Source of the DNA: Paragordius varius | Lineage: Eukaryota > Animalia > Nematomorpha | Reading direction: 5' to 3' | NCBI GenBank assembly: GCA_964247055.1 | Contig: OZ176053.1 | Span: 4,278,001 to 4,342,000 of the forward strand | Length of the DNA: 64,000 nucleotides | Shown: one piece after another, positions 1 through 13,641 of the stretch | How positions within the stretch are numbered: position 1 is the stretch's first letter | Layout: each line of letters begins with the position of its first letter | Program-made: the position numbers and the translations under genes | The notes under the pieces: model-generated | What the model was told of the DNA's origin: nothing | The model's database searches: none | The model's input: the letters and a program-made list of their open reading frames with translations, nothing else

Positions 1-1352
1 CCAATTTGAAAGTAAAACTTGGCAAGCCCAAGATACCACGCAGCGACAAATCATAAAAAGGGTAATAATATAAGGATAAAATCAGTTACTAACTGCCTTT
101 CAGCGCCGTACTTAATTGACAATATCCTTAAAGATCGATAAAATATATTTTGCAACAAACAGAAAAGAATTTGGTCACAGACACGACTTTTTGTTTGCAT
201 GGGTACTCAACACATGGTTACGGCGCTAACCATGTGCTAAGTTTAAAATCTTGACTAAAATTTAGGAGATAAATCAAAATCTTTATCAAATCCATATAAT
301 CCCATTATCGGCTTCAAAGCCACACGTTATTTTTAAATAGTGGTGAACATAGGGTGCGGCTCTAACTCACTGCTTATTCAAAAAAGCTTTTGACCAAATC
401 TTTATCTTTAAGTGGAAAATATTGAATCTATATGATCTCATAAGCTTTCCGTCAAATCCAAAAAACATTTTATTTAGTGGACTTCTTCCAAGAAACATTT
501 TATTTAGTGGACTTCTTTCCATATGGCCCTACCGAAGAGTTTATATGAGAAAAGAGTTTAACTATCTCTTCATGCATAAATTAGCTAAACTATTATTGAT
601 TATTAAAGGGCTAGAAATTTATTGCCTTTCTATGATAGCAAAACTATTTCATCTTTTTGATGTCATAGTTTTCCCGAAAATTTTATTACCGTTCCTGTTA
701 GTTTTACATGACGGCGGCATATTAAAGAGGGTTTGGGGCTCTATTTAGCGGCTAAAACGCTGTGGGGATAGAAGCACTATTAAATTTATATAAACTCATA
801 TGCGAAAATTGATTTTTGGGTTAGTTCGAATTAAAGAATAAGCCGCATATGTTCGGCGTATTCGTAAAAAAATAATTTTTATTATTGAATTCGGAAGGGC
901 CTACACGTTTTCCGGAAATCAGTCACAAACAGACGATTTTCGGAGACTTTTTTCGAACCCATTTTGCATGGGGTAAGGCTTAATTAAGAGACTAATTTGT
1001 AAAAATGGATTTTAATCATTTTTTTAAATAATGCGCCTAAAAGGTCATTGAATGCATATTAAATATAGTAATATATCATAGATCCTAAAAATAAATGCCT
1101 TTAATAATTTCAACCTTTTATTCGATAAATCACCAGTTAATATACATTTAAGTGAATAATACTTTTTACATGAAAAAAACAATTCAATTAAAAATAATAA
1201 TTATTTATATTGATATAAGTAGAAGTTGTAGTATCAAAAAAGCAAAAAACTAAAATTATCTACAAGTTTATAATAAGATTTCTGGAATTTGAAATTTGGT
1301 CAATGTTTGTTTTCATCACTATGGCAAAATTGACAAGTATTGGCAATAAGGA

Positions 1353-2503
1353 TTATAATTCATCCTTTTCCTAAAAATATAAAAAATTTAAAATTATAAC
1401 TTTTGTTACTAGATTATATAAATAGAATTCTAAAAACAAAACAGGTTATATTAAATGGACATTTACAATGTATAATTTTGAATGTTAATTAATATATTTT
1501 TTAATAACAGAATTAAACAATCTAACATTATTCAATAAAATGAAATATGTCTCTAAATCCAAAAACCATAAAAGGGCTGTTAGATTTTTTGGTAAAAAAA
1601 ATATTTGATCTGCAAAGAGACTTTTTAAGCAAATAAATTTCTATGAATAATAAAAAACATCGTTCTCACACGCACTAAATCAAAGACCGTTTCCCTGATT
1701 TGACATTAGTAATGTTTATACAACTTTCACTCTATTTTTTAACTTTTTTTATATATTACCAAAGATTTACACTAAATAATTAATAATTAAGCGCCTTCTA
1801 TTAATGAACATTTGTGATAAAAAACGCGTATATGTATATTAGTTTATAATTATCGGGCACTTTTCAAATGGTGATTGCCCACACCCCAAAAACGAAATTT
1901 AACAAGCTTCCGAATACATATTGTATTAGATGAAATAAATTTTTAAAATGCTTTTGCATAACATCGAAAAATGCCTGTGCTTTTAGTTTATCAAAGGTTA
2001 TATTAGAGCCAACAACCCGAGGAGTAAGCCGTAGAAAACTTATGTAAAAATCATTCTAGTTTTTAAAATCACATAAAACCGTTAAGATTTAATCATGTAC
2101 CTTGTTAAAGAGTTATTGTGATTAATATGTAAAAGTTGTATTTACCATGTTTGTTAAGGGACTTTTATAAATAAAATTATAATTCTCTAAAAGTTGACCA
2201 GGTACCATGTTATAGAAATTATTATAGAAAAATATCATCTAACGCATGAAAAATAAGGCAAAGGCAAATCTTATATAGTAACCTTTTCGGGTATGGTTTC
2301 TTCATCATCCAAATCTTCAGAATCTTTATTATCCGCGGTATCTTCAGGGCTTTCGGGCTCTTCGCTTTCCCCTTCTTCATCCTCCTCATCTTCGAGTATT
2401 TCTTGTTCGGGTTCAATCTTATGAAGAAATAAAATATATATAGAAATAGGGATACCAAAAATTTTTAAAACGATAAAAAGTACATATGGTTTACGATTTA
2501 CTC

Positions 2504-2539
<36 letters not shown>

Positions 2540-5500
2540 CAATCAACCAAACCGAAAATGGAGTTATGCAAAAACTTCGTCAATAACAATTGTATACTAA
2601 TTTCGTGCTTGTAAGCATTTATCAAATTGTTGGAGTTTATCAATGTATTGTTTTAATAAAAACAGTTATGGAAATACTAAATTATAAATTAAGAAAAAAT
2701 TTAACTATAATTCCCGGTTTATTTTGATTTATTTTGTTTAATAAAGTTTACATATGGCAAAATAAAATTTACTAGATAAAATTTTCCAAAATAATGGAAA
2801 CTTAAATAATATTTTAACAATGGTACCCCAAGATTTATATATCGTTCCACTTTAAAACATTAAAACTATAATATTTCAGAGCGTTCAAGAGTGTGAAAAA
2901 AACCTGTTGATCCCCCAAATCAAAAGACATTTTCATCATGCGTTCCACACGCTCGGCATAACCCTTAGTGTCTGAAAGACTGTAACCAGATCGAAGGGTG
3001 GCTGTTTCAAACAACAAAGTTGCCATATCATTGGCTAAATTGTCATCCGGGTTTGTCTGTTTGTTGCAGAAATTAAGAAATATTTGTGTTATGATAAATA
3101 TATTTTTATAGTGTTGTGTGTGCACCAGTTTTAAAAATTTACCTGTACTCTGCGTAATAATTCTTTGATCAATGGATGTCTAGGATTGATTTCTAATGTT
3201 TTTTTCATGTTTGCATAGTATCTATATTGTTTTGATAGAAATACTTTATAAATATGCCATTAAGTTTAAAAAAATTAAATGTTAAAAACAACATGCAGTA
3301 ATAATAAGCATTCACACAAGTTAGTAATTCGTGCATATAATATATGAGAGCCATGCAATAAATAAGTGGTTAAACAATGTATAAAGTTAGAATTTTTATA
3401 AAATAATTAAGTATGCTAGAAAAGGATGAATACAGAGATTTTAAAAAGTAGATATACCTAATAAATATTAAATTACCATTAGATTTACAATTAATAGATA
3501 TTCAAACAGGTACAGGTAAAAAAATTAAAATAAAATTTAATACGGAGAAAAAGAATGGAAATCGGAAATTTAAAAAATATTTTCATAAAATTTAATTAAA
3601 GTGAAAAACTCTGTATTAGCATCATTAGATTTTTTATAAGCCGATGATTTCATAACGCGTTCCATTGCGGCGTCCCACCCATAAGTTTGAGCCAATAAAA
3701 CGAGGGGACTTTCCTCTAATCGCGAAGATATGGTTATATGTTCAAGATTCTAAGCGAAAAAAGGAATATGCATAGATAATATGCCCCCGATAAAGTTTAT
3801 AGCATGTAAAAAAGTAAAATGGCAATTTTTTCAAATGATATGATTTAAGATAAAAGTATAGCGAATTATCAATTAAAATTATAAAATCAAATATTTATCG
3901 ATAAATGAGTTTTTTTATGTAAAAAATTTGAAAAATAGGAATAATGAAGATTAATTATATTATTATATAGGCGAGTGACAAAAATAAAGTGTATTATAAA
4001 CACGATAGAATTATTTTCATTAAAATTATTGCGAAAACGGCCAATTTTGGAGTAAATAAATTTTATTTGTAATATTGCTCCACATTCGCAATAAAGACAA
4101 GATAATCTCTGGATATAAGTCATGTAACTGTAAAATAAGAAAATTCAATTTATAAATGGCAAATTTAAATGGTTAATCAAAGCAGACGAGAAAATTGTAA
4201 TAAATATCGCGAATGAAACGACAGTAGCGCTGACAAAAAAGTAAACATGATGTCAATTAAAAAATGTAGGGTGAAAAACGGTTTTATGAGGACAACAAAA
4301 GGTTTGAAAAAAATTCAAGATTGAACAAGATAAAAAAATATATGGTTTAACTGACATTTATAAAGCATAATGAATATTTTATTAAAAAGATTATATTCTA
4401 ACCAATACTCCCGCGTTGCGATAAATGTATGAGATGGCGATGAAGCTTTTAAATTATGATATTATTTATGCAATTTAAAAATTACTTCAGTTATATATAA
4501 ATCCGAGTTATGAGGACTTCGTAGTAGAACACACTTTTTATGATATATAATAAATTAGGAATGATCCGGCAAAATACTTTTGTTGCATAGTTCAAAATTT
4601 AAATAAAAATTATTTCGACCGGATTTAGGTTTCATGCTTTAGTAAAACCTTTGCGAATTATTCAATATTAAGCAATATGTCTCTTTGCCCAAAATTAAAT
4701 ACAAGTAACACGTAAGAAATATTCAACAGACATGCAATGCATCATGCTTGTATAATGTTAGTGTTCTCAAATGTTAGAAAAAAGCAAAAGCTAAGTTAGT
4801 ATAATACATGCCCTAAATAAAAGATAAGACAATACATGCTGTCACTGTGTTATACACTTAATTACTCAGTCATAGGGTCATTCGATTTGGCATAAGCCGA
4901 AGATTTCATAATACGCTCCATATTACCGCTCCACCCATAAGTGCTGGCTATAAGGGCACAAGGGGAATCGGCTAATCGCTCAGAAATTTGAGATTTTTCA
5001 ATCTTTTCCGTTCATGTGAACAAAAAATTATCATATTTTTTTATACAAAGTATTTATTTAATGTTTGTTAAAGGTTATATTTTAGTAAAATAAACCTTAC
5101 AATTCAACAAATAAAAATTTCAATTATTAATTATAATATAATAACATTAATACTGTGTATTATTATTAAATTTACAATTTATATAGCGAAAAAAGGCAAT
5201 ACCTTATCCTTTAAACCCTTATCCTTAAGCCACGTCATTAAGGGTTCAAATTTTTTCTCCAAACTTTTGCGATGTTTTTCACTCTTTTTACCCTGGTCTA
5301 GGACCAAACCTTCTTTTGCAACATTCTATGAGACAAAATAAAAAATAATATATTTAGTGTTTATAATAATTAATATTAAATTTTTAATAATAAATATATT
5401 ACAATGAATTTTTTCCCTTCGTATTCGGGTAACGCTTGTATGCAATACTCATCAATCGGTTCAATCATGTACAAAACTTCGTAACCCTTTTTCAGTAACC

Positions 5501-8500
5501 TTTCAACAAACGGGGAATTTTTGACCTGAAAAACATATTATGATAAAATTAATATATCTTTTTTGTAAAAATGTTTTAATTTTTGTTCGTGTTTGCGTTA
5601 AGCGCAAAATAAGCAAAAAAACTAAGTTTTAATTTAGCTTTTACGTCCTGGTTATTTATGTCCATACTACCGTTTTTTTCAATAAAAGCGATTTCTATTG
5701 GCATTAGAGTATGGCGATTTCCACATTTTGCCGGCCAAAAAGTAATTACCTAAAAAAACTTTACCAAATTTTGTATGCTCCATGTTTTTACAAAATAGTT
5801 TGAATTTAAAATGTTGCATTTTAGTCTGGAATGTTAATGACTAATTGTTTTGTTATAAAAAATAATTGAGGTCAAAAAATAGAAACTTCTTTCATAGATT
5901 GCCCAGCTACAAAGTATATGCCGTCCTGTTTTTCTTGCATGCGATCTAAATATTCATCCAGGGATGTAGGATGTGTTTCATTATGCGACGAAGAAAATCG
6001 CAATAATTTAGCCAATCGCATTTTATTACCCGTGTCCTCCACGACACCCAATTTAATGCTATGAAAAAAAAGTTTTTGTGGTTAAAATATAAAAACTAAT
6101 AATATTTATTAATTAAAATAGTTTAAATAATATTTTTACTATATTTTAATATTTATAAATATTTAAATATTTTATAAAAAATTTAAAACGCTATATGAAG
6201 AGAACATATAGATTAGTAATTAGGTAGGTTAGATGTTATAAATATATGAGTAAACACCGAAAACTGAAAATTTTAAATATATATTATTTATATAAAAAAT
6301 AAAAAATTATGCCCTATGCAATATACAGAAAAAAAGGGAGCTGCTCCGTGATAATAAACCATTATAAAATTTATTTATTTAATAATTCTATCGCATTCTT
6401 ATCCAATATACTTACTTTGTGCTATATTCCTTCCAGAATTTGGCATAGTCGGTCGAATTGACAGACATACGTTTTATCATCTCCAAGACTTTTCGAACCA
6501 ATTTTCGTTTTATGACTTTCATTAATTTACTGAGCTGTAATGTTTCACGGCTAATATGGAGAGGCAAATCGTCAGAATCAACAACGCCAGTCACAAAAGT
6601 TAGATAACGTGGCATCATGTCATCAAAATCACTTGTTATAAAGACACGACGAACATAGAGTTTGATATTATCCACTTTTTTATCTAATTATATGCAATAT
6701 GTATGTATATTTTTCATTTTGTTTTCTTTCTTGACATATAAATCATAGAGCGTGGCTTTAAATGGGATGTAAAATTAATTTTAATAATTCTACAACGCAT
6801 TTAAAGACAAAATCAATTAGTTAACTAATGCCTAAAAAGTTTTTTCAAAAAAAAGAAAAATGTTGTATCGATGCTGATAATATAAAGTTTACACTATTTT
6901 GGTTTGGCTTTAAGGTACATCAAAAAATAATGATTTTATTTCGTTATTTATATGCAATGTTTATTACAAGATAGAATGTCATCAAAATTCCTAAACTACG
7001 ATTCATTTTGGCACTTATGTGTTTATAAAAAAACTGACCTAAAACAAAAGTTAAAAAAAACAGATTGTATTTATATCCTTAAACTTATAAACTTATGTAT
7101 GATGTAATATGATTACTGTGATCCAACATATTGGGTGTTGCCGTTTTTCCAATGTATAATACGGCTTTGAAACTGACCTCCCCCTCAGCTACAAAGTGTG
7201 TGTAATTAAGGGGTTCAGCGCTATCTTTAGTGATTGATTTGTAAAAATCGACATATTCTTTGTCTGATATGTCCGATGGTCTAAATGTAGGATAAATATA
7301 TAAAAAATATTTCTTAATATACATTTCTGTTTTGAGAAAATGGTATAGTTATAAGTAAGATATTGATACACAGATATTCGTAGTATCTTAGTCAATTAAT
7401 ATTACTAATTTGTCAATTTCTTTCTGTTTGCGTCAAATATGATCGTATATAAAAATAATTACATTAACACAAGTGTTTAATTTAAATATTATTTAAATGA
7501 CCTATTTTAAGATTATATAATTGTATTAATAATTTAATTGTGTTTTTTACATACTTGCGTGTCCAAATAGGTTTAACGTCATTCATTACATTGTATTCCC
7601 AAACTGTCTTTTCGACCGTTTTTGTTTTCTCTTTCTTGGCGTCAGATTCCTCCTCAACCTATGACAAATAAAATATTTTAAAAGTTATCAGAGAAAATGA
7701 ATCCTACAACTTTATCAAAATTCTAAATTATATAGAGTATTTAAAATTTTATCGCGCTGTAACAAAATTTACCAAAAAACGGAAATTATTCATTTAACCG
7801 TATAAAATTGATTTTAAAACTTAAAATAATAATTTTGTATACTTCAACGTCATCTTTGTCTTTTGCTGGTTTTTCTTCTCTAATCGGTTCTATGGGTTCT
7901 TCAACCTTTTTTACCTTTATATAATAAACATCAAAAATGTTAGATAACCGAAAAAAACAACATGTAAAATCCTGATAAAATATTTATGAAATATTAAAGT
8001 CGAATATAGAGGAAATATTAATTAAATAATTAATTCACTTAATCAAAAAATTATATTTTAAACAAAAATCTTTTGGATATATTACCGTTTTCTGATAAAA
8101 GTAAATAGGGAAATTAATGAATTGACTATATTTTTTGATTAGGTTTATGATGGTGGTATCATCCAAATATTCGTGGGCCTCTTCCTTCAAATGTAAACTG
8201 AATTTTAAAAAATATGATTTATTAAATAAATTAAAATATGTGTAAAATTCGTTTAGTTTATTCTATAAATAAATTAACGGTATGCAAGCGAATCTTAAGA
8301 ATGGATAATTATATAACTTTACGAATTGGAATTAATATTTAACAAATATAATTCGATTCAGAGGTAAAAAATATGCTCATAAATCAAGAAATTATTAAGC
8401 AATTATTATTTTATAAAAAGAACTAGGATCTTAAAGAAACGAAAACCTACATTGTTAATTTAAACATTGAAGAACTAAAAGCATCTATTCAACTTAGAGT

Positions 8501-10045
8501 CAGATTAGAGATGACAGTTATAAAAAGTAAGAAATTTATGATAACTTGTGCAATAATTTTTTTAAAAACCTCAATTAAAATTGTATAAATGTTAGAAAAT
8601 AGTGGATATGATATACCTAACTTGGGTTCCCCGATGCAATGTATTTCCTCTCGGATCTTTAGCAATGTTAAATTGAGTTCCATCCGATTCCCAAATATAT
8701 TGATCGTCATCATTGTGTTTCGATATAACTGCCACCTGTAATAAAATATTTATTAATTCTTAAAATAAGATTGCAAACAACCAATATAAAAACCAAAAAA
8801 ATGGTGAACATTTTACAGTAATAATTAAAGGACTTTTGAGGAACATACATTTTTAATCCTTGTTTTTTATATTAATCTGTATATAATCGTGAATTTGCCC
8901 TAAATGCTTGTTATTGTATAAGATACAAAATAAAAATATTAAATTGATATTGGCTCCTATTTTAATAATTTGTTAAACTGTTTTTACACCAAATATTTTA
9001 ATGCACATTTTCTTTATATAATAAAAATTTAATTTAGAACAAAAGTTAAAGTTTAATATGAAACCCATATGTATAACATTATTTTTTATATGATTTTTTG
9101 GGTCGCGAATTACACTAAAGAGATTATGTAAACTGATCCACTGAATATATATAACAATTGAAAAAGACCTCTGCTAAGGCACACATTAATAATAAAACAA
9201 AAATATATTTTATTTTTATATAAGTAAACCTTATCAGCCACCAAAAAAGCAGAATAAAATCCGACACCAAATTGTCCAATCAATTCATTGGTATCAACTT
9301 TCCCATCAGCCATCTCTTTGAGAAATTGCGAAGTGCCCGATTTGGCAATCGTTCCTGCATTAAAAAAACAAATTAATTCATTATTTTTTAGGAAATTAGG
9401 TTTTATGTACTAATACATACCTAAATTTGATACGAGTTCATTTCGTGTCATACCAATACCAGTGTCAATGATATGAATAACTTTATTTTCTTTATCAACC
9501 TATTATAAATTAAAAAAGAATTAATTAGGTCGCATAAAGGATATTGGTTGGTATAAAATATATTACCTTGATTGTTATATTCAACTCTCCTGGAGATTCA
9601 TCGGTTTTTGTTAAAAACAAGAATCTTATTTTGTCCAATGCATCTGATGCATTTGATATCAATTCTCGCAAAAATATCTTAAATAATATATGAAAATAAA
9701 TACTTCTTTATGTCTATATATAAAATTTATTATTATTTTCATTAGTCTTTGGATTTCAGCGTCAAATGGCAAATTTTTTGCTTCCTTTTTCATTTTCTCT
9801 AATTGTTCTTTGCTAAACTCATTGTACAAAACTTCATCAGAACTAATAAAAAAATTATAATAAAGAGGTTGAATGCAAAGTAATAATTAATATAATCCAC
9901 TGAAAATACTTCAATAAATCATCTTTTGGTGTCAAAACCTCTCCATCCTGAAAAACATCCGTGGAAATATAGGCACCTAAATATCAGAAACTAAAATACT
10001 GATAAAAAGCGTCGAAAATCCAATAAAAAGAATCAAAATTCGCAT
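1353..10045 (-). CDS. HSP90B1: Endoplasmin / GRP94 (ER HSP90), 20 coding exons, ~781 aa, plus one alternative exon
   Basis: Exons (minus): 10045-10000, 9976-9910, 9842-9704, 9677-9567, 9499-9421, 9354-9230, 8735-8617, 8197-8086, 7914-7843, 7658-7555, 7280-7117, 6683-6416, 6058-5887, 5525-5403, 5325-5203, 5002-4866 (or 3749-3610), 3221-3143, 3056-2904, 2417-2283, 1370-1353. All junctions are GT-AG and phase-consistent (2346 nt). Signal peptide [16 protein letters not shown], motifs [55 protein letters not shown], and C-terminal EKDEL*. Confidence 0.97.
3610..3749 (-). CDS. HSP90B1: Alternative (duplicated) GRP94 exon 16[48 protein letters not shown]
   Basis: 140-nt open exon with acceptor tttttcgcttag| and donor GA|GTTTTT. 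Same phases (0 in, 2 out) as exon 5002-4866, and 28/46 aa identical to it. Confidence 0.85.
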
Positions 10046-10139
10046 TGGATATGCTAGCCAATAAAAATGCAAGACGTAAAAATGTGTTTCGGCGAATGCA
10101 AAAATGTAGAATGTGTTTTTTTATTATTACAATCTAGGG

Positions 10140-10195
10140 CAGTGGTATTCAAACCGCGGTCCACGGGCCGCATGCGGCCCTAAAAGTGCTTTTTT
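10140..10195 (+). mobile_element. Solo terminal fragment of the Buster/SPIN-like hAT family
   Basis: CAGTGGTATTCAAACCGCGGTCCACGGGCCGCATGCGGCCCTAAAAGTGC is near-identical to the reverse complement of the 45768 end of the hAT at 43446-45768. No partner end or TSD found. Confidence 0.75.
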
Positions 10196-10755
10196 ATGAA
10201 TAAAAATTTTCACTGATAAATTTTACATGATATTTATTATTATATAGTTTTGATGATAAATTCTGGCTTAATTAAATACGGTACTTTTCTAGTTTTATCT
10301 ATTATAAAATTAGTTTTAATTTAAAAGAAAAATTGACATAGATAGTTATTTAAAAATTTTATTCAACAAAAATAATAATTTGGCACGCTTTTGTTTGTAT
10401 TAGGTATTTTCTTTTCTTAGATCTCATATTCATTTATATTTTAACACTGCATAACCTTTTGCGGTGGTAATATATTTTAGAGTGATTAATTTGAGTATTG
10501 TAACAAGTATTTAAGGTTTTAAGACAAATTCAAAGAATTTAAAAAATTAAATTAAATGTAGATTTGCAAAAGTATCTCAATTTTTTTCTTTATATTTTTG
10601 CTAATGTAAATAGGCAAATAAATGCCTTTTATGATTAGACAATGTAAATAATTAGTTTTAGTAAGCTTTTAGCCTACATACCCGCAAAAACTTTATATAT
10701 ATTGATTTAAACGTCGGATGTTCGTTTCTATCTTTTTGAGCTGTCTTAATTTTAA

Positions 10756-10900
10756 CACTTGGATACAACACATTCCTTTCAGTCCCTTCGATTCAAATGG
10801 GTTTACGCCATGCTTGTTCATTAAATATTTTAAAAAATATCAAATAAATTGAAACATGGCAAATATTTGCACCTTTATAACATTAATAAATCGAAATATG
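10756..10900 (+). mobile_element. Partial copy of TTAA-flanked (piggyBac-like) MITE
   Basis: TTAA|CACTTGGATACAACAC...TTCGATTCAAAT matches the left end of 19870-20401. Right end not found and the endpoint is approximate. Confidence 0.6.
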
Positions 10901-11687
10901 AAAAAAAAATCATTCTAAAATGCAGTGGAAATTGGGGGTAATTTTTCTAGGATATCATTCCTAGCTTAATATGAGCCTTGTGACATAAACATCTCAAAAA
11001 TATAAGAATAAAAAAATTGTCAATGTATTTTTTCTACTTTTTCATATATGGTTGTATTCGGAAAAAATCAATTTATATGCATATTACTTGATCAAAAACT
11101 ATAAAACTCACAAATATAAATATGATTAGATATTTTTTGTAAATTATATTCATTTTGAATGGCTAGATTTAGATAATCTTCAATTTAGTAAATCCAGCTA
11201 AATTTAGCCCTTTGTATGTAACATCAAAACTCGGTGAAAATCAATATAATATGTGCCAAAATTTAAGTTTTATTTTATATACCAATATTAATATTTATAT
11301 ATGATACAATTACATTACCAAGTTATAAGTTTTTGAAATTTTTTATTTTACGAAAATAAAATTAAATTTTTTGTGATAAATTTTTGTTTGATCTTGCCTA
11401 GAGATAATAAAATTTTGAAGCGTCCAGGATGAAACTATAATTAAGCTAGAGTTGCTGTAAATTTTATAAAGGCAATTTACGTCTAATCAAATTGATAATT
11501 TACATTATGTTCTTTGTGTAATATATTTACTTTTGATATACATATAATATATTCACTCTCCTCAATCTAAAATATGTTTTTCAATGAATGTTTTAGAAAT
11601 GAGGTTTTTGAATCTTTGTGAATATAACTTTCATTTGCTATTTTTAGTTTTAATGTTAAATTCTGCCAAGGAATTGGCTACTCTTAG

Positions 11688-13641
11688 ATTATCCATTCTT
11701 TTCTTGGGCCATCGAAAAACAACCTATCTTACTTAGGACATATGACATTCAACTCATTCGAAATCCTAATATTGAAAAAGTCTTTTTTTGCCAAATATTA
11801 ATGATAAAATACCTTAATAAAATGTATATCAACGCCTTTTATTAGATTCAAATATAAGAATTTAAAGAAATGGTACTCGGCAAAAAATTTAAAGGGCTCC
11901 AAAAAATATCTTGTCTCAAGAACCCTGCAACATATTACAACTATTAAAACTTGCAGATATTTATACAAAAAAGTATATCATAAAATTTAATTGGTAATTC
12001 AGGGCCATAAATACGCTTTTAGCGCCACAGTTTTCTTAAAGTTTAATTCTTTCCTGGCCAAAACTGTCTTTTTAAAAAATAATTCAAGAAAAATCACCTC
12101 AGAATTTCTATTTAACATTCGTTCGTCTTCAATTTTATGTATAAAAATTGGTTTTTTAAAAAAAATGCACCAATTATTTTAGGCAAAACATTTAAATCAA
12201 AATTCTGAAGCGATAGAAATGTTCAGCATTAGTGAATTATATAGAAAAAATGTTTTATAAAATCCAAAAGCGTTTTTATACCGTGTCCATCATACCTTGA
12301 AATAGTATAAAGTACGCTTCAAGAAAATTTTACTAAAAATTAGATTTTTGAAAAAAGTATGCATTTTTTAAAATATTTTTAGATACTAAAATTTATCATA
12401 TATTTATAATTTTTAAGCGCAATCTCGGTATTTTTGTGTATAATTTAGAACTAGCCTATTTTAAAATAGCAAAACATTTGGCACTTTCCGAACCCACATA
12501 AAATCACCATTTTTGAATCCTTTTTATATGTTGTTTATAATTTATTGATGTTTTTGAATGAAGGCTCTTTTCATCCAAAAAATTATATAAAAAGTGTACG
12601 TAAATTTTGCCATTTTCTGGGTTAACAAAAGTCTTAATAACTTTTTTAAATTAGTAAGGGTCAAAACCAAAAGCACCATCATAACCCTGATACATCTTCC
12701 CATCAGAATATATGTAATTCATCAAATTATTTATATCCTTGGATTTTGGAGGCAGTGTTATTTAAATATGTTATATTTACAATATCTAAATGTATTTTTG
12801 TATTATAATAAAACATAATTTTATAACTTTGGGAGATCTTATGGATATTTATGCATGTTAAAATAAGATTTTAAGATAATAAACCGTTTAATTAAAATTT
12901 AATCCTTTATCAGCTCACTAATTATTTTATTGCAAAAAAAATAAAATGTCCACATATACTTTTCGTCGATCAAAATTTAATAAAGTTTAGGTAAATAAAA
13001 ATCTTCAGCAGTATCAAATCATATAAAAGTCCATTACACTGTTTCTATCTATTTTAAATTAAGCTTTGATAAAATCCTGCTATAACTTTTTTATTTTTGC
13101 TTTACCCCGCTTTAGAAAGGGGATAATTTGAAAGTTTTATAAAACTTAAAAATCTTTAATAATAATTAAATATGGCTTATTATCTATTTTGAAAATTTTT
13201 GTTGGAATAATACATTTCGCATTGACCAAAATTTTATTATTATAATATGCCCTAATCTTGCAATTTTTTATATGAAATATAGTGATATTTTTTAAATGAC
13301 TTGTTCAAACTAAAATAAGCATTCAAAGTCCGTAGTTTTTCCACAAAAAAAGTATATTTTTTCAAAATATTTTTTTATGTGCATTATACACATATTTAAA
13401 AACATATTTCAATTTTTTCATTCTCTTCAGCTTATGATATGCAATCCTTTGCGTCAACGTCTTGTCAAAACCTAGTATCATTCTTGCGTAACTAAACAGT
13501 ATATTACTTGATTATAATACTTTATTATAATAATTCTTTTAATATTAATTAGGTATGTTTTTTTATAATACTCATTAATGATATTTAAAGATTGAATATG
13601 ATAAATTAGATGCATTAACTGAAATGCTTACTCATTCTAAG
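11688..13641 (+). CDS. Candidate upstream exons of the CEP97-like gene (11688-11779, ~13431-13474, 13591-13641)
   Basis: Open AG/GT-bounded segments DYPFFSWAIEKQPILLRTYDIQLI, YDMQSFASTSCQNL and IEYDKLDALTEMLTHSK loosely resemble the post-LRR cap region of CEP97. 13591-13641 joins 14632 in phase 0. Linkage of the first two segments is not resolved. Confidence 0.35.

What the first reader, a model, noticed from the sequence alone, without database searches (positions are those of the whole stretch)
3610..5002. Candidate mutually exclusive exon pair in GRP94 covering the client-binding region
Seen: exon 5002-4866 ([46 protein letters not shown]) has an intact paralogous copy at 3749-3610 ([46 protein letters not shown]), 28/46 aa identical, with no stop or frameshift and good splice sites. 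Both exons are phase 0 in and phase 2 out, so including both or neither shifts the frame and only one-of-two works. Established: this segment opens the C-terminal dimerization domain and overlaps the GRP94/gp96 client-binding stretch with the MERIM methionine pair. Inference: two ER chaperone isoforms that differ at the conserved SPC cysteine (to L) and at WSGN (to WDAA), possibly with different client or redox behaviour. I know of no described cassette of this kind in HSP90B1.
Basis: partly seen in the sequence, partly recalled or inferred. Interest (0 to 1): 0.85.

Follow-up and report, generated by a model that had tools for sequence, protein, structure and literature searches.

The report
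Alternative client-binding exons in hairworm GRP94
A horsehair-worm gene for the ER chaperone GRP94 carries two tandem versions of the exon for its client-binding/hinge segment; both are kept intact and under selection in a second, distant hairworm genus, so the gene very probably makes two chaperone versions, though no RNA has yet been seen.

Summary
A complete 21-exon GRP94 gene lies on the minus strand (10045-1353). Exon A (5002-4866, 137 nt) and exon B (3749-3610, 140 nt) are paralogous (28/46 aa). Both enter in phase 0 and leave in phase 2. Including both or neither shifts the frame to an early stop.

The Gordionus GRP94 locus (whole protein 62% identical) has the same arrangement, with an intact B-type exon and the same GTTTTT donor. 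The B orthologues keep 75% identity at codon positions 1+2 against 33% at position 3 (p = 2e-6). They form a 100/97-supported clade and are the only alignable island in otherwise unalignable introns. They share residues (L15, Q20, D25) seen in none of 251 other HSP90-family segments.

A neutral pseudo-exon is therefore excluded, and only B-instead-of-A use explains the conserved frame. The segment equals human GRP94 631-676, covering the 652-678 client-binding stretch and the position homologous to the Hsp90 C-terminal switch point.

No library protein is B-type, and the Gordionus annotation uses A only. No paper describing this was found. The scan has flagged similar exon pairs in other genes of this genome.

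The parts
1353..10045 (-). Whole GRP94/endoplasmin gene: 21 exons counting both A and B, signal peptide to KDEL stop
   Evidence: Gene model built from tblastn anchors and GT/AG boundaries. It gives 777 aa with A and 778 aa with B. The N-terminal exons 1-2 are the least certain.
5203..5325 (-). Constitutive exon 15 upstream of the pair; ends in phase 0, donor GTATTG
   Evidence: Aligns to Gordionus L001 at nucleotide level.
4866..5002 (-). Exon A, the canonical version (SPCAL...[10 protein letters not shown]), 137 nt, phase 0 in and 2 out. Its purine-rich acceptor lacks the T-rich run that most acceptors of the gene have. Donor GTAATT.
   Evidence: It is 39/46 aa identical to Gordionus exon A. 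It matches endoplasmin PDB chains at E about 1e-13.
3750..4865 (-). Intron between A and B, 1116 nt, far longer than most of the gene's introns (as short as 26 nt)
   Evidence: Not alignable to the 1232-nt Gordionus counterpart. No further exon copy inside it.
3610..3749 (-). Exon B, the divergent version ([17 protein letters not shown]), 140 nt, phase 0 in and 2 out, strong polypyrimidine acceptor, donor GTTTTT
   Evidence: The orthologue at L001:13130-13266 is intact. Purifying selection is shown.
3143..3221 (-). Constitutive exon 18 downstream of the pair. Its first base completes the split Glu codon left by either A or B.
3429..3442 (-). Intron stretch able to pair (13 of 14 positions) with 3617-3604, the end of exon B plus its donor. 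A weak candidate for masking the B donor.
   Evidence: z = -2.06; 5 of 200 shuffles fold as well. No equivalent significant fold in Gordionus. Listed as a lead only.

Best explanation
Exons A and B are an old tandem duplication of the GRP94 exon that encodes human-equivalent residues 631-676. That segment holds the C-terminal hinge strand (SPCAL) and the amphipathic client-binding helix (GW..MERIM). Each mRNA is expected to carry exactly one of them. The result is two ER chaperones, identical elsewhere, that differ at about 18 of 46 positions in this segment.

Shown here:
- Both exons are intact and in the same phase.
- Both are flanked by usable splice sites.
- Both have been kept as protein-coding sequence in two deeply diverged hairworm lineages.

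Inferred:
- One-of-two use is enforced at least by reading frame. Transcripts with both or neither exon hit an early stop several junctions upstream of the last exon, and so should be removed by nonsense-mediated decay.
- The choice may be biased by exon A's weak acceptor set against exon B's strong acceptor and weak donor.
- The B isoform most likely alters the conformational cycle and/or client range. It replaces the Cys and the neighbouring Ala, the latter homologous to the yeast Hsp82 A577 / human Hsp90 C598 switch point, with bulkier Leu and Val. It puts an Asp before the client-binding helix while keeping the Trp and both Met residues.
For: - Structure and frames.
- GTT-type donors at 5 of 19 constitutive introns of this gene, including an identical GTTTTT.
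- Gordionus locus L001 has A at 11761-11897 and a B-type exon at 13130-13266. The B exon is 137 nt, has an AG acceptor and a GTTTTT donor, and sits in the same phase. One whole codon differs in length from the window's B.
- B orthologues: 31/46 aa identical. Codon positions 1+2 are 69/92 identical against 15/46 at position 3, Fisher p = 2.4e-6. dN is 0.29 with dS saturated.
- Across 2.2 kb only exons 15, A, B and 18 align between the species.
- The tree gives (B,B) 100/97 and (A,A) 94/90 support.
- B keeps the residues that are most conserved across the HSP90 family: S7, R9, L10, P14, L17, G23, W24, M28, R30. Both B copies share L15, Q20 and D25, each found in 0 of 251 other sequences.
- Both B exons pass the Pfam HSP90 cut-off.
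- Functional mapping.
Against: - No RNA evidence of any kind.
- No run on record as RNA holds the region.
- No B-type protein turned up in four large protein-library searches or among the 296 proteins they returned, nor in two metagenome scans.
- The RNA-seq-guided Gordionus annotation lists only A-type products.
- B evolves about 3.5 times faster than A at the protein level (dN 0.29 against 0.083).
- In the window, B has lost the otherwise invariant Asn27.
- No conserved RNA pairing that could enforce the choice was found.
Confidence: 0.85

Rival explanations
1. Exon B is an unused, decaying duplicate (a neutral pseudo-exon) that merely happens to be still open.
For: No B-type transcript or protein was found in any search. 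Annotators of Gordionus did not call it. B diverges faster than A.
Against: Synonymous positions between the two species are saturated, yet positions 1+2 stay 75% identical (p = 2.4e-6). Both copies are free of stops, and their only length difference is one whole codon. The acceptor, donor hexamer and phase are conserved. Flanking introns are unalignable. Most family-invariant residues are retained.
Confidence: 0.03
2. Exon B works mainly as a poison exon. It is spliced in together with A to create a premature stop and tune GRP94 output by nonsense-mediated decay, rather than to make a second protein.
For: Inclusion of both exons gives a stop at aa 655, inside B. B has a strong acceptor. No B-type protein was seen.
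Against: A poison exon is constrained at nucleotide level or at its stop, not in one particular reading frame. Here the conserved frame is the one read only when A is absent. Third positions are free to change, and HSP90-invariant residues are kept. In the A+B frame this conservation pattern has no explanation.
Confidence: 0.05
3. The pair was a working alternative-exon pair in the hairworm ancestor, but B has recently fallen silent in the window's species. It would be intact only because too little time has passed.
For: The window's B changed the otherwise invariant Asn27 to Ala and has the longer branch (0.42 against 0.18). A window-specific stem could mask its donor.
Against: The exon is intact with good splice signals. 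In the k-mer index, a close relative (organism B) and all runs of the species hold most of its sampled words. Part of the long branch may reflect the fast evolution of this lineage in general.
Confidence: 0.05

Closest known systems
Tandem-duplicated mutually exclusive exons, for example FGFR2 IIIb/IIIc, tropomyosin, and the insect Dscam, 14-3-3 zeta and MRP clusters (from my own knowledge of the splicing literature; no paper read here)
   Same: Neighbouring homologous exons of nearly equal length and identical phase. The frame survives only if exactly one is included. Both copies are conserved across species. A defined structural module of the protein is swapped.
   Different: The host gene is an HSP90-family chaperone, for which I found no reported case. 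No RNA proof yet. No conserved docking/selector RNA pairing, no steric (short-intron) constraint and no U2/U12 incompatibility is visible. Frame plus nonsense-mediated decay is therefore the only enforcement that can be read from the sequence.
Other candidate exon pairs flagged by this scan in the same genome (Piezo, Cav1, P4HA, integrin beta, hexokinase, lysyl oxidase, numb)
   Same: Same genome, same architecture of tandem same-phase exon copies. Two of the follow-ups also report conservation in other hairworms and a lack of RNA data.
   Different: Different genes. These are unchecked AI notes that I did not re-test. They suggest that exon-pair diversification is common in this lineage, which lowers the surprise of any single case.
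Yeast Hsp82 A577I and human Hsp90 C598 S-nitrosylation, the C-terminal 'switch point' (PMC7375816, citing Retzlaff 2009 and Martinez-Ruiz 2005)
   Same: Exon position 16 is eight residues before the conserved Trp, which is where A577 lies relative to W585 in yeast. It is Ala in the A type and Val in both B types. The neighbouring Cys becomes Leu. In yeast, a bulkier hydrophobic residue at this position raises the closed population and the ATPase rate several-fold.
   Different: That is an engineered mutation or a post-translational modification in cytosolic Hsp90. Here the change would be delivered by exon choice in the ER paralogue. The positional equivalence rests on a gapless alignment and on yeast numbering recalled from memory. 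No biochemical effect has been tested.
GRP94 client-binding domain 652-678 with Met658/Met662 (PMC7465916, citing Wu et al. 2012)
   Same: Exon positions 22-46 correspond to residues 652-676. Both Met residues and the Trp are kept in A and in B.
   Different: The mammalian work used deletions and point mutants of a single-isoform gene. No natural isoform variation of this stretch has been described.

Membership tests
Mutually exclusive exon pair arising by tandem exon duplication | Two neighbouring exons in one gene, on the same strand, with recognisable sequence homology | tested here: met
   28/46 aa identical. Both hit Pfam HSP90 profile positions 377-418. They are separated by one 1116-nt intron.
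Mutually exclusive exon pair arising by tandem exon duplication | Similar length and identical splice phase, with the frame kept only when exactly one exon is included | tested here: met
   137 and 140 nt, phase 0 in and 2 out. Both included gives a stop at aa 655; neither gives a stop at aa 618.
Mutually exclusive exon pair arising by tandem exon duplication | Each exon has its own acceptor and donor | tested here: met
   AG acceptors on both. Donors are GTAATT and GTTTTT. GTT-type donors serve 5 constitutive exons of the same gene, and the B donor hexamer is identical in Gordionus.
Mutually exclusive exon pair arising by tandem exon duplication | Both copies maintained by purifying selection in other species | tested here: met
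   Gordionus L001 has both copies. For the B orthologues p = 2.4e-6 for positions 1+2 against position 3. The (B,B) clade has 100/97 support.
Mutually exclusive exon pair arising by tandem exon duplication | Transcripts contain one or the other exon, never both, in productive mRNA | not tested
No run on record as RNA holds the region.
GRP94 / endoplasmin (HSP90B1) | HSP90 domain organisation with an N-terminal signal peptide and a C-terminal KDEL-type retention signal | tested here: met
   The gene model has a hydrophobic N-terminus and ends in EKDEL. Exon 12 hits Pfam HSP90 at 6e-42. The signal peptide was judged by eye, not with a predictor.
GRP94 / endoplasmin (HSP90B1) | Closer to endoplasmin than to cytosolic HSP90 or TRAP1 | tested here: met
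   Exon A scores 53-54 bits against endoplasmin PDB chains and about 40 bits against HSP90 alpha/beta. The model is about 62% identical over 684-758 aligned residues to named endoplasmins.

The most novel reading that the evidence does not exclude
Hairworms use exon choice to switch their single ER HSP90 between two mechanical and client-binding states. The B isoform would carry a naturally 'locked' hydrophobic, cysteine-free C-terminal switch point and a recharged entry to the client-binding helix. It might be deployed at a particular life stage, such as the parasitic juvenile inside the insect as opposed to the free-living adult. That would be a natural counterpart of the engineered Hsp82 A577I mutant and the first isoform-level tuning of the HSP90 C-terminal domain by splicing.
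Probability: 0.25. Interest if true: 0.7.

Novelty: new member of a known kind. Interest (0 to 1): 0.55.

Why it matters
HSP90-family diversity is normally explained by gene duplication (cytosolic alpha/beta, GRP94, TRAP1) and by post-translational modification, not by alternative exons.

Here evolution has kept two versions of exactly the segment that mammalian work ties to client binding (652-678, Met658/662) and that yeast work ties to long-range control of the ATPase cycle. The pair has persisted for the whole divergence of two hairworm lineages.

The roughly 18 differences, six of them shared by both B orthologues, form a ready-made, selection-vetted mutation set. It could be used to ask which residues of the GRP94 C-terminal domain set client range and conformational equilibrium.

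The finding also corrects the Gordionus annotation, which misses the exon. It adds to signs from this scan that tandem exon pairs are frequent in Nematomorpha.

Tried and rejected
1. RNA evidence. The first run search found no RNA holder. The second, on exon B alone, found a 24-Mb contig set (X11, same species) holding 11 of 11 sampled words. Whether X11 is RNA, and whether it carries the junctions, remains unknown.
Local scripts did read the whole window for gene modelling.
3. Library searches for B-type proteins: exon B against 1.84 billion representatives, the exon B ORF against the 90% clusters, and two profile searches with longer first rows to reach 88-875-aa proteins. None returned a B-type sequence. 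They did yield the Gordionus protein that led to L001.
4. Exact look-ups of ten window ORFs found nothing.
5. Two degenerate-pattern scans of metagenome contigs for the B signature gave 0 hits.
6. Competing RNA structures. Inverted repeats in both species are AT-rich low-complexity matches with no shared docking or selector element. A stem over the B donor in the window is marginal (z = -2.06), and Gordionus has no significant fold (z = +0.52). I reject this as a demonstrated mechanism.
7. Steric hindrance and U12-type incompatibility are rejected from the intron length (1116 nt) and the splice-site sequences.
8. The nematode Bursaphelenchus xylophilus has a single copy of the exon, so the duplication is not shared with that nematode.
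9. The GC-rich block at 10140-10180 is not a tRNA.

Full report
**What is there.** The window is AT-rich (about 27% GC). It carries a GRP94/endoplasmin gene on the minus strand. From tblastn anchors and GT/AG boundaries I built a model of 21 exons from 10045 to 1353. With exon A (5002-4866) it encodes 777 aa. With exon B (3749-3610) it encodes 778 aa. Both versions have a hydrophobic N-terminus and end in EKDEL.
- A is 137 nt and B is 140 nt. Both start in phase 0 and end in phase 2.
- Both leave 'GA', which the first base of exon 18 (3221) completes to Glu.
- With both exons the frame stops at aa 655, inside B. With neither it stops at aa 618.
- The copies are 28/46 aa and 62% nucleotide identical, with third codon positions the most diverged.
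- tblastn over window 1-12000 finds only these two copies.

**Splice signals.**
- B has a good polypyrimidine tract plus AG.
- B's donor is GTTTTT. That would look weak elsewhere, but this gene's constitutive exons use GTTTCT (exons 1 and 13), GTTTAC (exon 6), GTTTTT (exon 19) and GTTACT (exon 20).
- An earlier scan note (s1-326614) on an altered U1 snRNA, and on exons often ending in A, fits this pattern. Both A and B end in A.
- Exon A has a purine-rich acceptor (..ACGGAAAAG) without the T-rich run that most acceptors of the gene have. The Gordionus counterpart (..GCAAAATAG) is similar.
- The A-B intron is 1116 nt, whereas most introns of the gene are much shorter (down to 26 nt).

**The decisive comparison.** A profile search that combined a long GRP94 fragment with the window's exons returned an annotated endoplasmin of Gordionus sp. 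m RMFG-2023, which is G. montsenyensis (P0071 and P0184).
- Its two annotated products differ only by two N-terminal residues, and both are A-type.
- Its locus (L001, from OX940784.2) contains exon A at 11761-11897.
- 1232 nt further on lies an unannotated, intact B-type exon at 13130-13266. It has an AG acceptor, is 137 nt long, is in the same phase and has the same GTTTTT donor.
- The two species are far apart. Whole GRP94 proteins are 62% identical, no closer than to molluscs. Synonymous sites are saturated.
- In the 2.2 kb from exon 15 to exon 18, only the four exons align, including B at 72% over 107 nt (E = 1e-10). The introns do not align.

**Selection on B.**
- Between the B orthologues, codon positions 1+2 are 69/92 identical and position 3 is 15/46 identical (Fisher p = 2.4e-6).
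- dN is 0.29 with dS not computable because of saturation. The A orthologues have dN 0.083.
- The only length difference between the B exons is one whole codon.
- A maximum-likelihood tree with 16 outgroup segments groups the two B exons (100/97) and the two A exons (94/90). The duplication therefore predates the split of the two hairworms.
- A nematode (Bursaphelenchus) locus has one copy.
- Against 251 HSP90-family segments, both B exons keep the family's most conserved residues (S7, R9, L10, P14, L17, G23, W24, M28, R30). They share L15, Q20 and D25, which occur in none of the 251.
- Each B exon alone passes Pfam HSP90's curated threshold.
- This pattern excludes a neutral pseudo-exon. It also does not fit a pure poison exon. 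The conserved frame is the one read only when A is left out.

**What the segment does.** Exon A aligns to endoplasmin PDB chains; in entry 9n9j the match covers chain residues 631-672. This puts exon positions 28 and 32 at Met658 and Met662.
[quoted passage not shown] - B keeps the Trp and both Met residues. It changes the residues just before the helix: SGN becomes DAA in the window and DAN in Gordionus.
- B also changes the preceding strand: SPCAL.AS becomes SPLVL.AQ.
- Exon position 16 lies eight residues before the Trp, as A577 does before W585 in yeast Hsp82. The yeast numbering is from memory.
- PMC7375816 equates A577 with the S-nitrosylation site C598 of human Hsp90. It reports that A577I raises the closed population from 13% to 51% and the ATPase rate several-fold.
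- Both B exons carry Val at that position, and Leu in place of the neighbouring Cys.
- The inference that isoform B has a shifted conformational equilibrium, no thiol at this site and a modified client surface is reasonable but untested.

**How exclusivity would work.**
- Shown: the frame arithmetic.
- Inferred: removal of A+B and skip-both products by nonsense-mediated decay.
- I looked for competing RNA pairings of the insect type and found only AT-rich chance matches.
- A 14-nt stem that would cover the B donor in the window (3617-3604 with 3442-3429) is marginal (z = -2.06). Gordionus has no significant fold (z = +0.52).
- Steric hindrance and U12-type incompatibility do not apply.

**What is missing.** There is no RNA evidence.
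- The two run searches found only DNA-type holders. They also found one small contig set (X11, 24 million letters, same species) that holds all 11 sampled words of exon B. It may be a transcriptome, but I could not look.
- Local scripts did read the whole window.
- No B-type protein exists in the libraries searched or in the metagenome contigs.
- The RNA-guided Gordionus annotation has A only. B may therefore be a minor or stage-restricted isoform.

**Novelty and context.** Full-text searches pairing mutually exclusive exons with endoplasmin, GRP94, HSP90B1, Gp93, enpl-1 or HSP90 found no description of such a cassette. The mechanism class, tandem exon duplication giving alternative exons, is well known. 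This scan has also flagged similar pairs in several other genes of the same genome. I therefore rate this a new member of a known kind. Its interest is specific to chaperone biology.

**Organism.** That the organism is a horsehair worm comes from earlier scan notes. My own support for it is the shared derived exon pair, the shared lineage-specific KSSAY motif and the similar base composition with Gordionus.

Noticed in passing
window 9992, 9230, 5887, 2904, 2283 (minus-strand exon ends) and 3610: Five of the 19 constitutive donors of this gene are GTT-type (GTTTCT, GTTTAC, GTTTCT, GTTTTT, GTTACT) rather than GTA/GTG. The Gordionus B exon also uses GTTTTT. This may relate to the unusual U1 snRNA noted elsewhere in this genome.
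   Followed up: partly
L001:13130-13266 (Gordionus sp. m RMFG-2023, OX940784.2): The public Gordionus annotation (CAK9294784/5, XP_065316574) lacks the intact B-type exon. Its two listed products differ only by two N-terminal residues.
   Followed up: yes
window 10140-10180 (minus strand): A 41-nt GC-rich block (about 66% GC in a 27% GC region) lies about 100 nt upstream of the GRP94 start codon. It is unique in the window and not a tRNA. It could be a promoter element.
   Followed up: partly
window 4866-4924 / 3610-3668 and L001 13208-13274: The 3' halves of all four exons (MKSS.Y.K.ND..TE) are much more alike than the 5' halves. Ser/Thr at position 40 co-varies within species (S in both window copies, T in both Gordionus copies). 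This hints at occasional gene conversion or shared constraint.
   Followed up: no
window 2500-2535: A (TA)n microsatellite lies in the intron between exons 19 and 20.
   Followed up: no
P0001 and P0006: Two library proteins contain this HSP90 segment twice. P0001 is a perfect 100-aa direct repeat and looks like an assembly artefact. P0006 is a degenerate cytosolic-HSP90-like read-through. Neither is B-type.
   Followed up: partly
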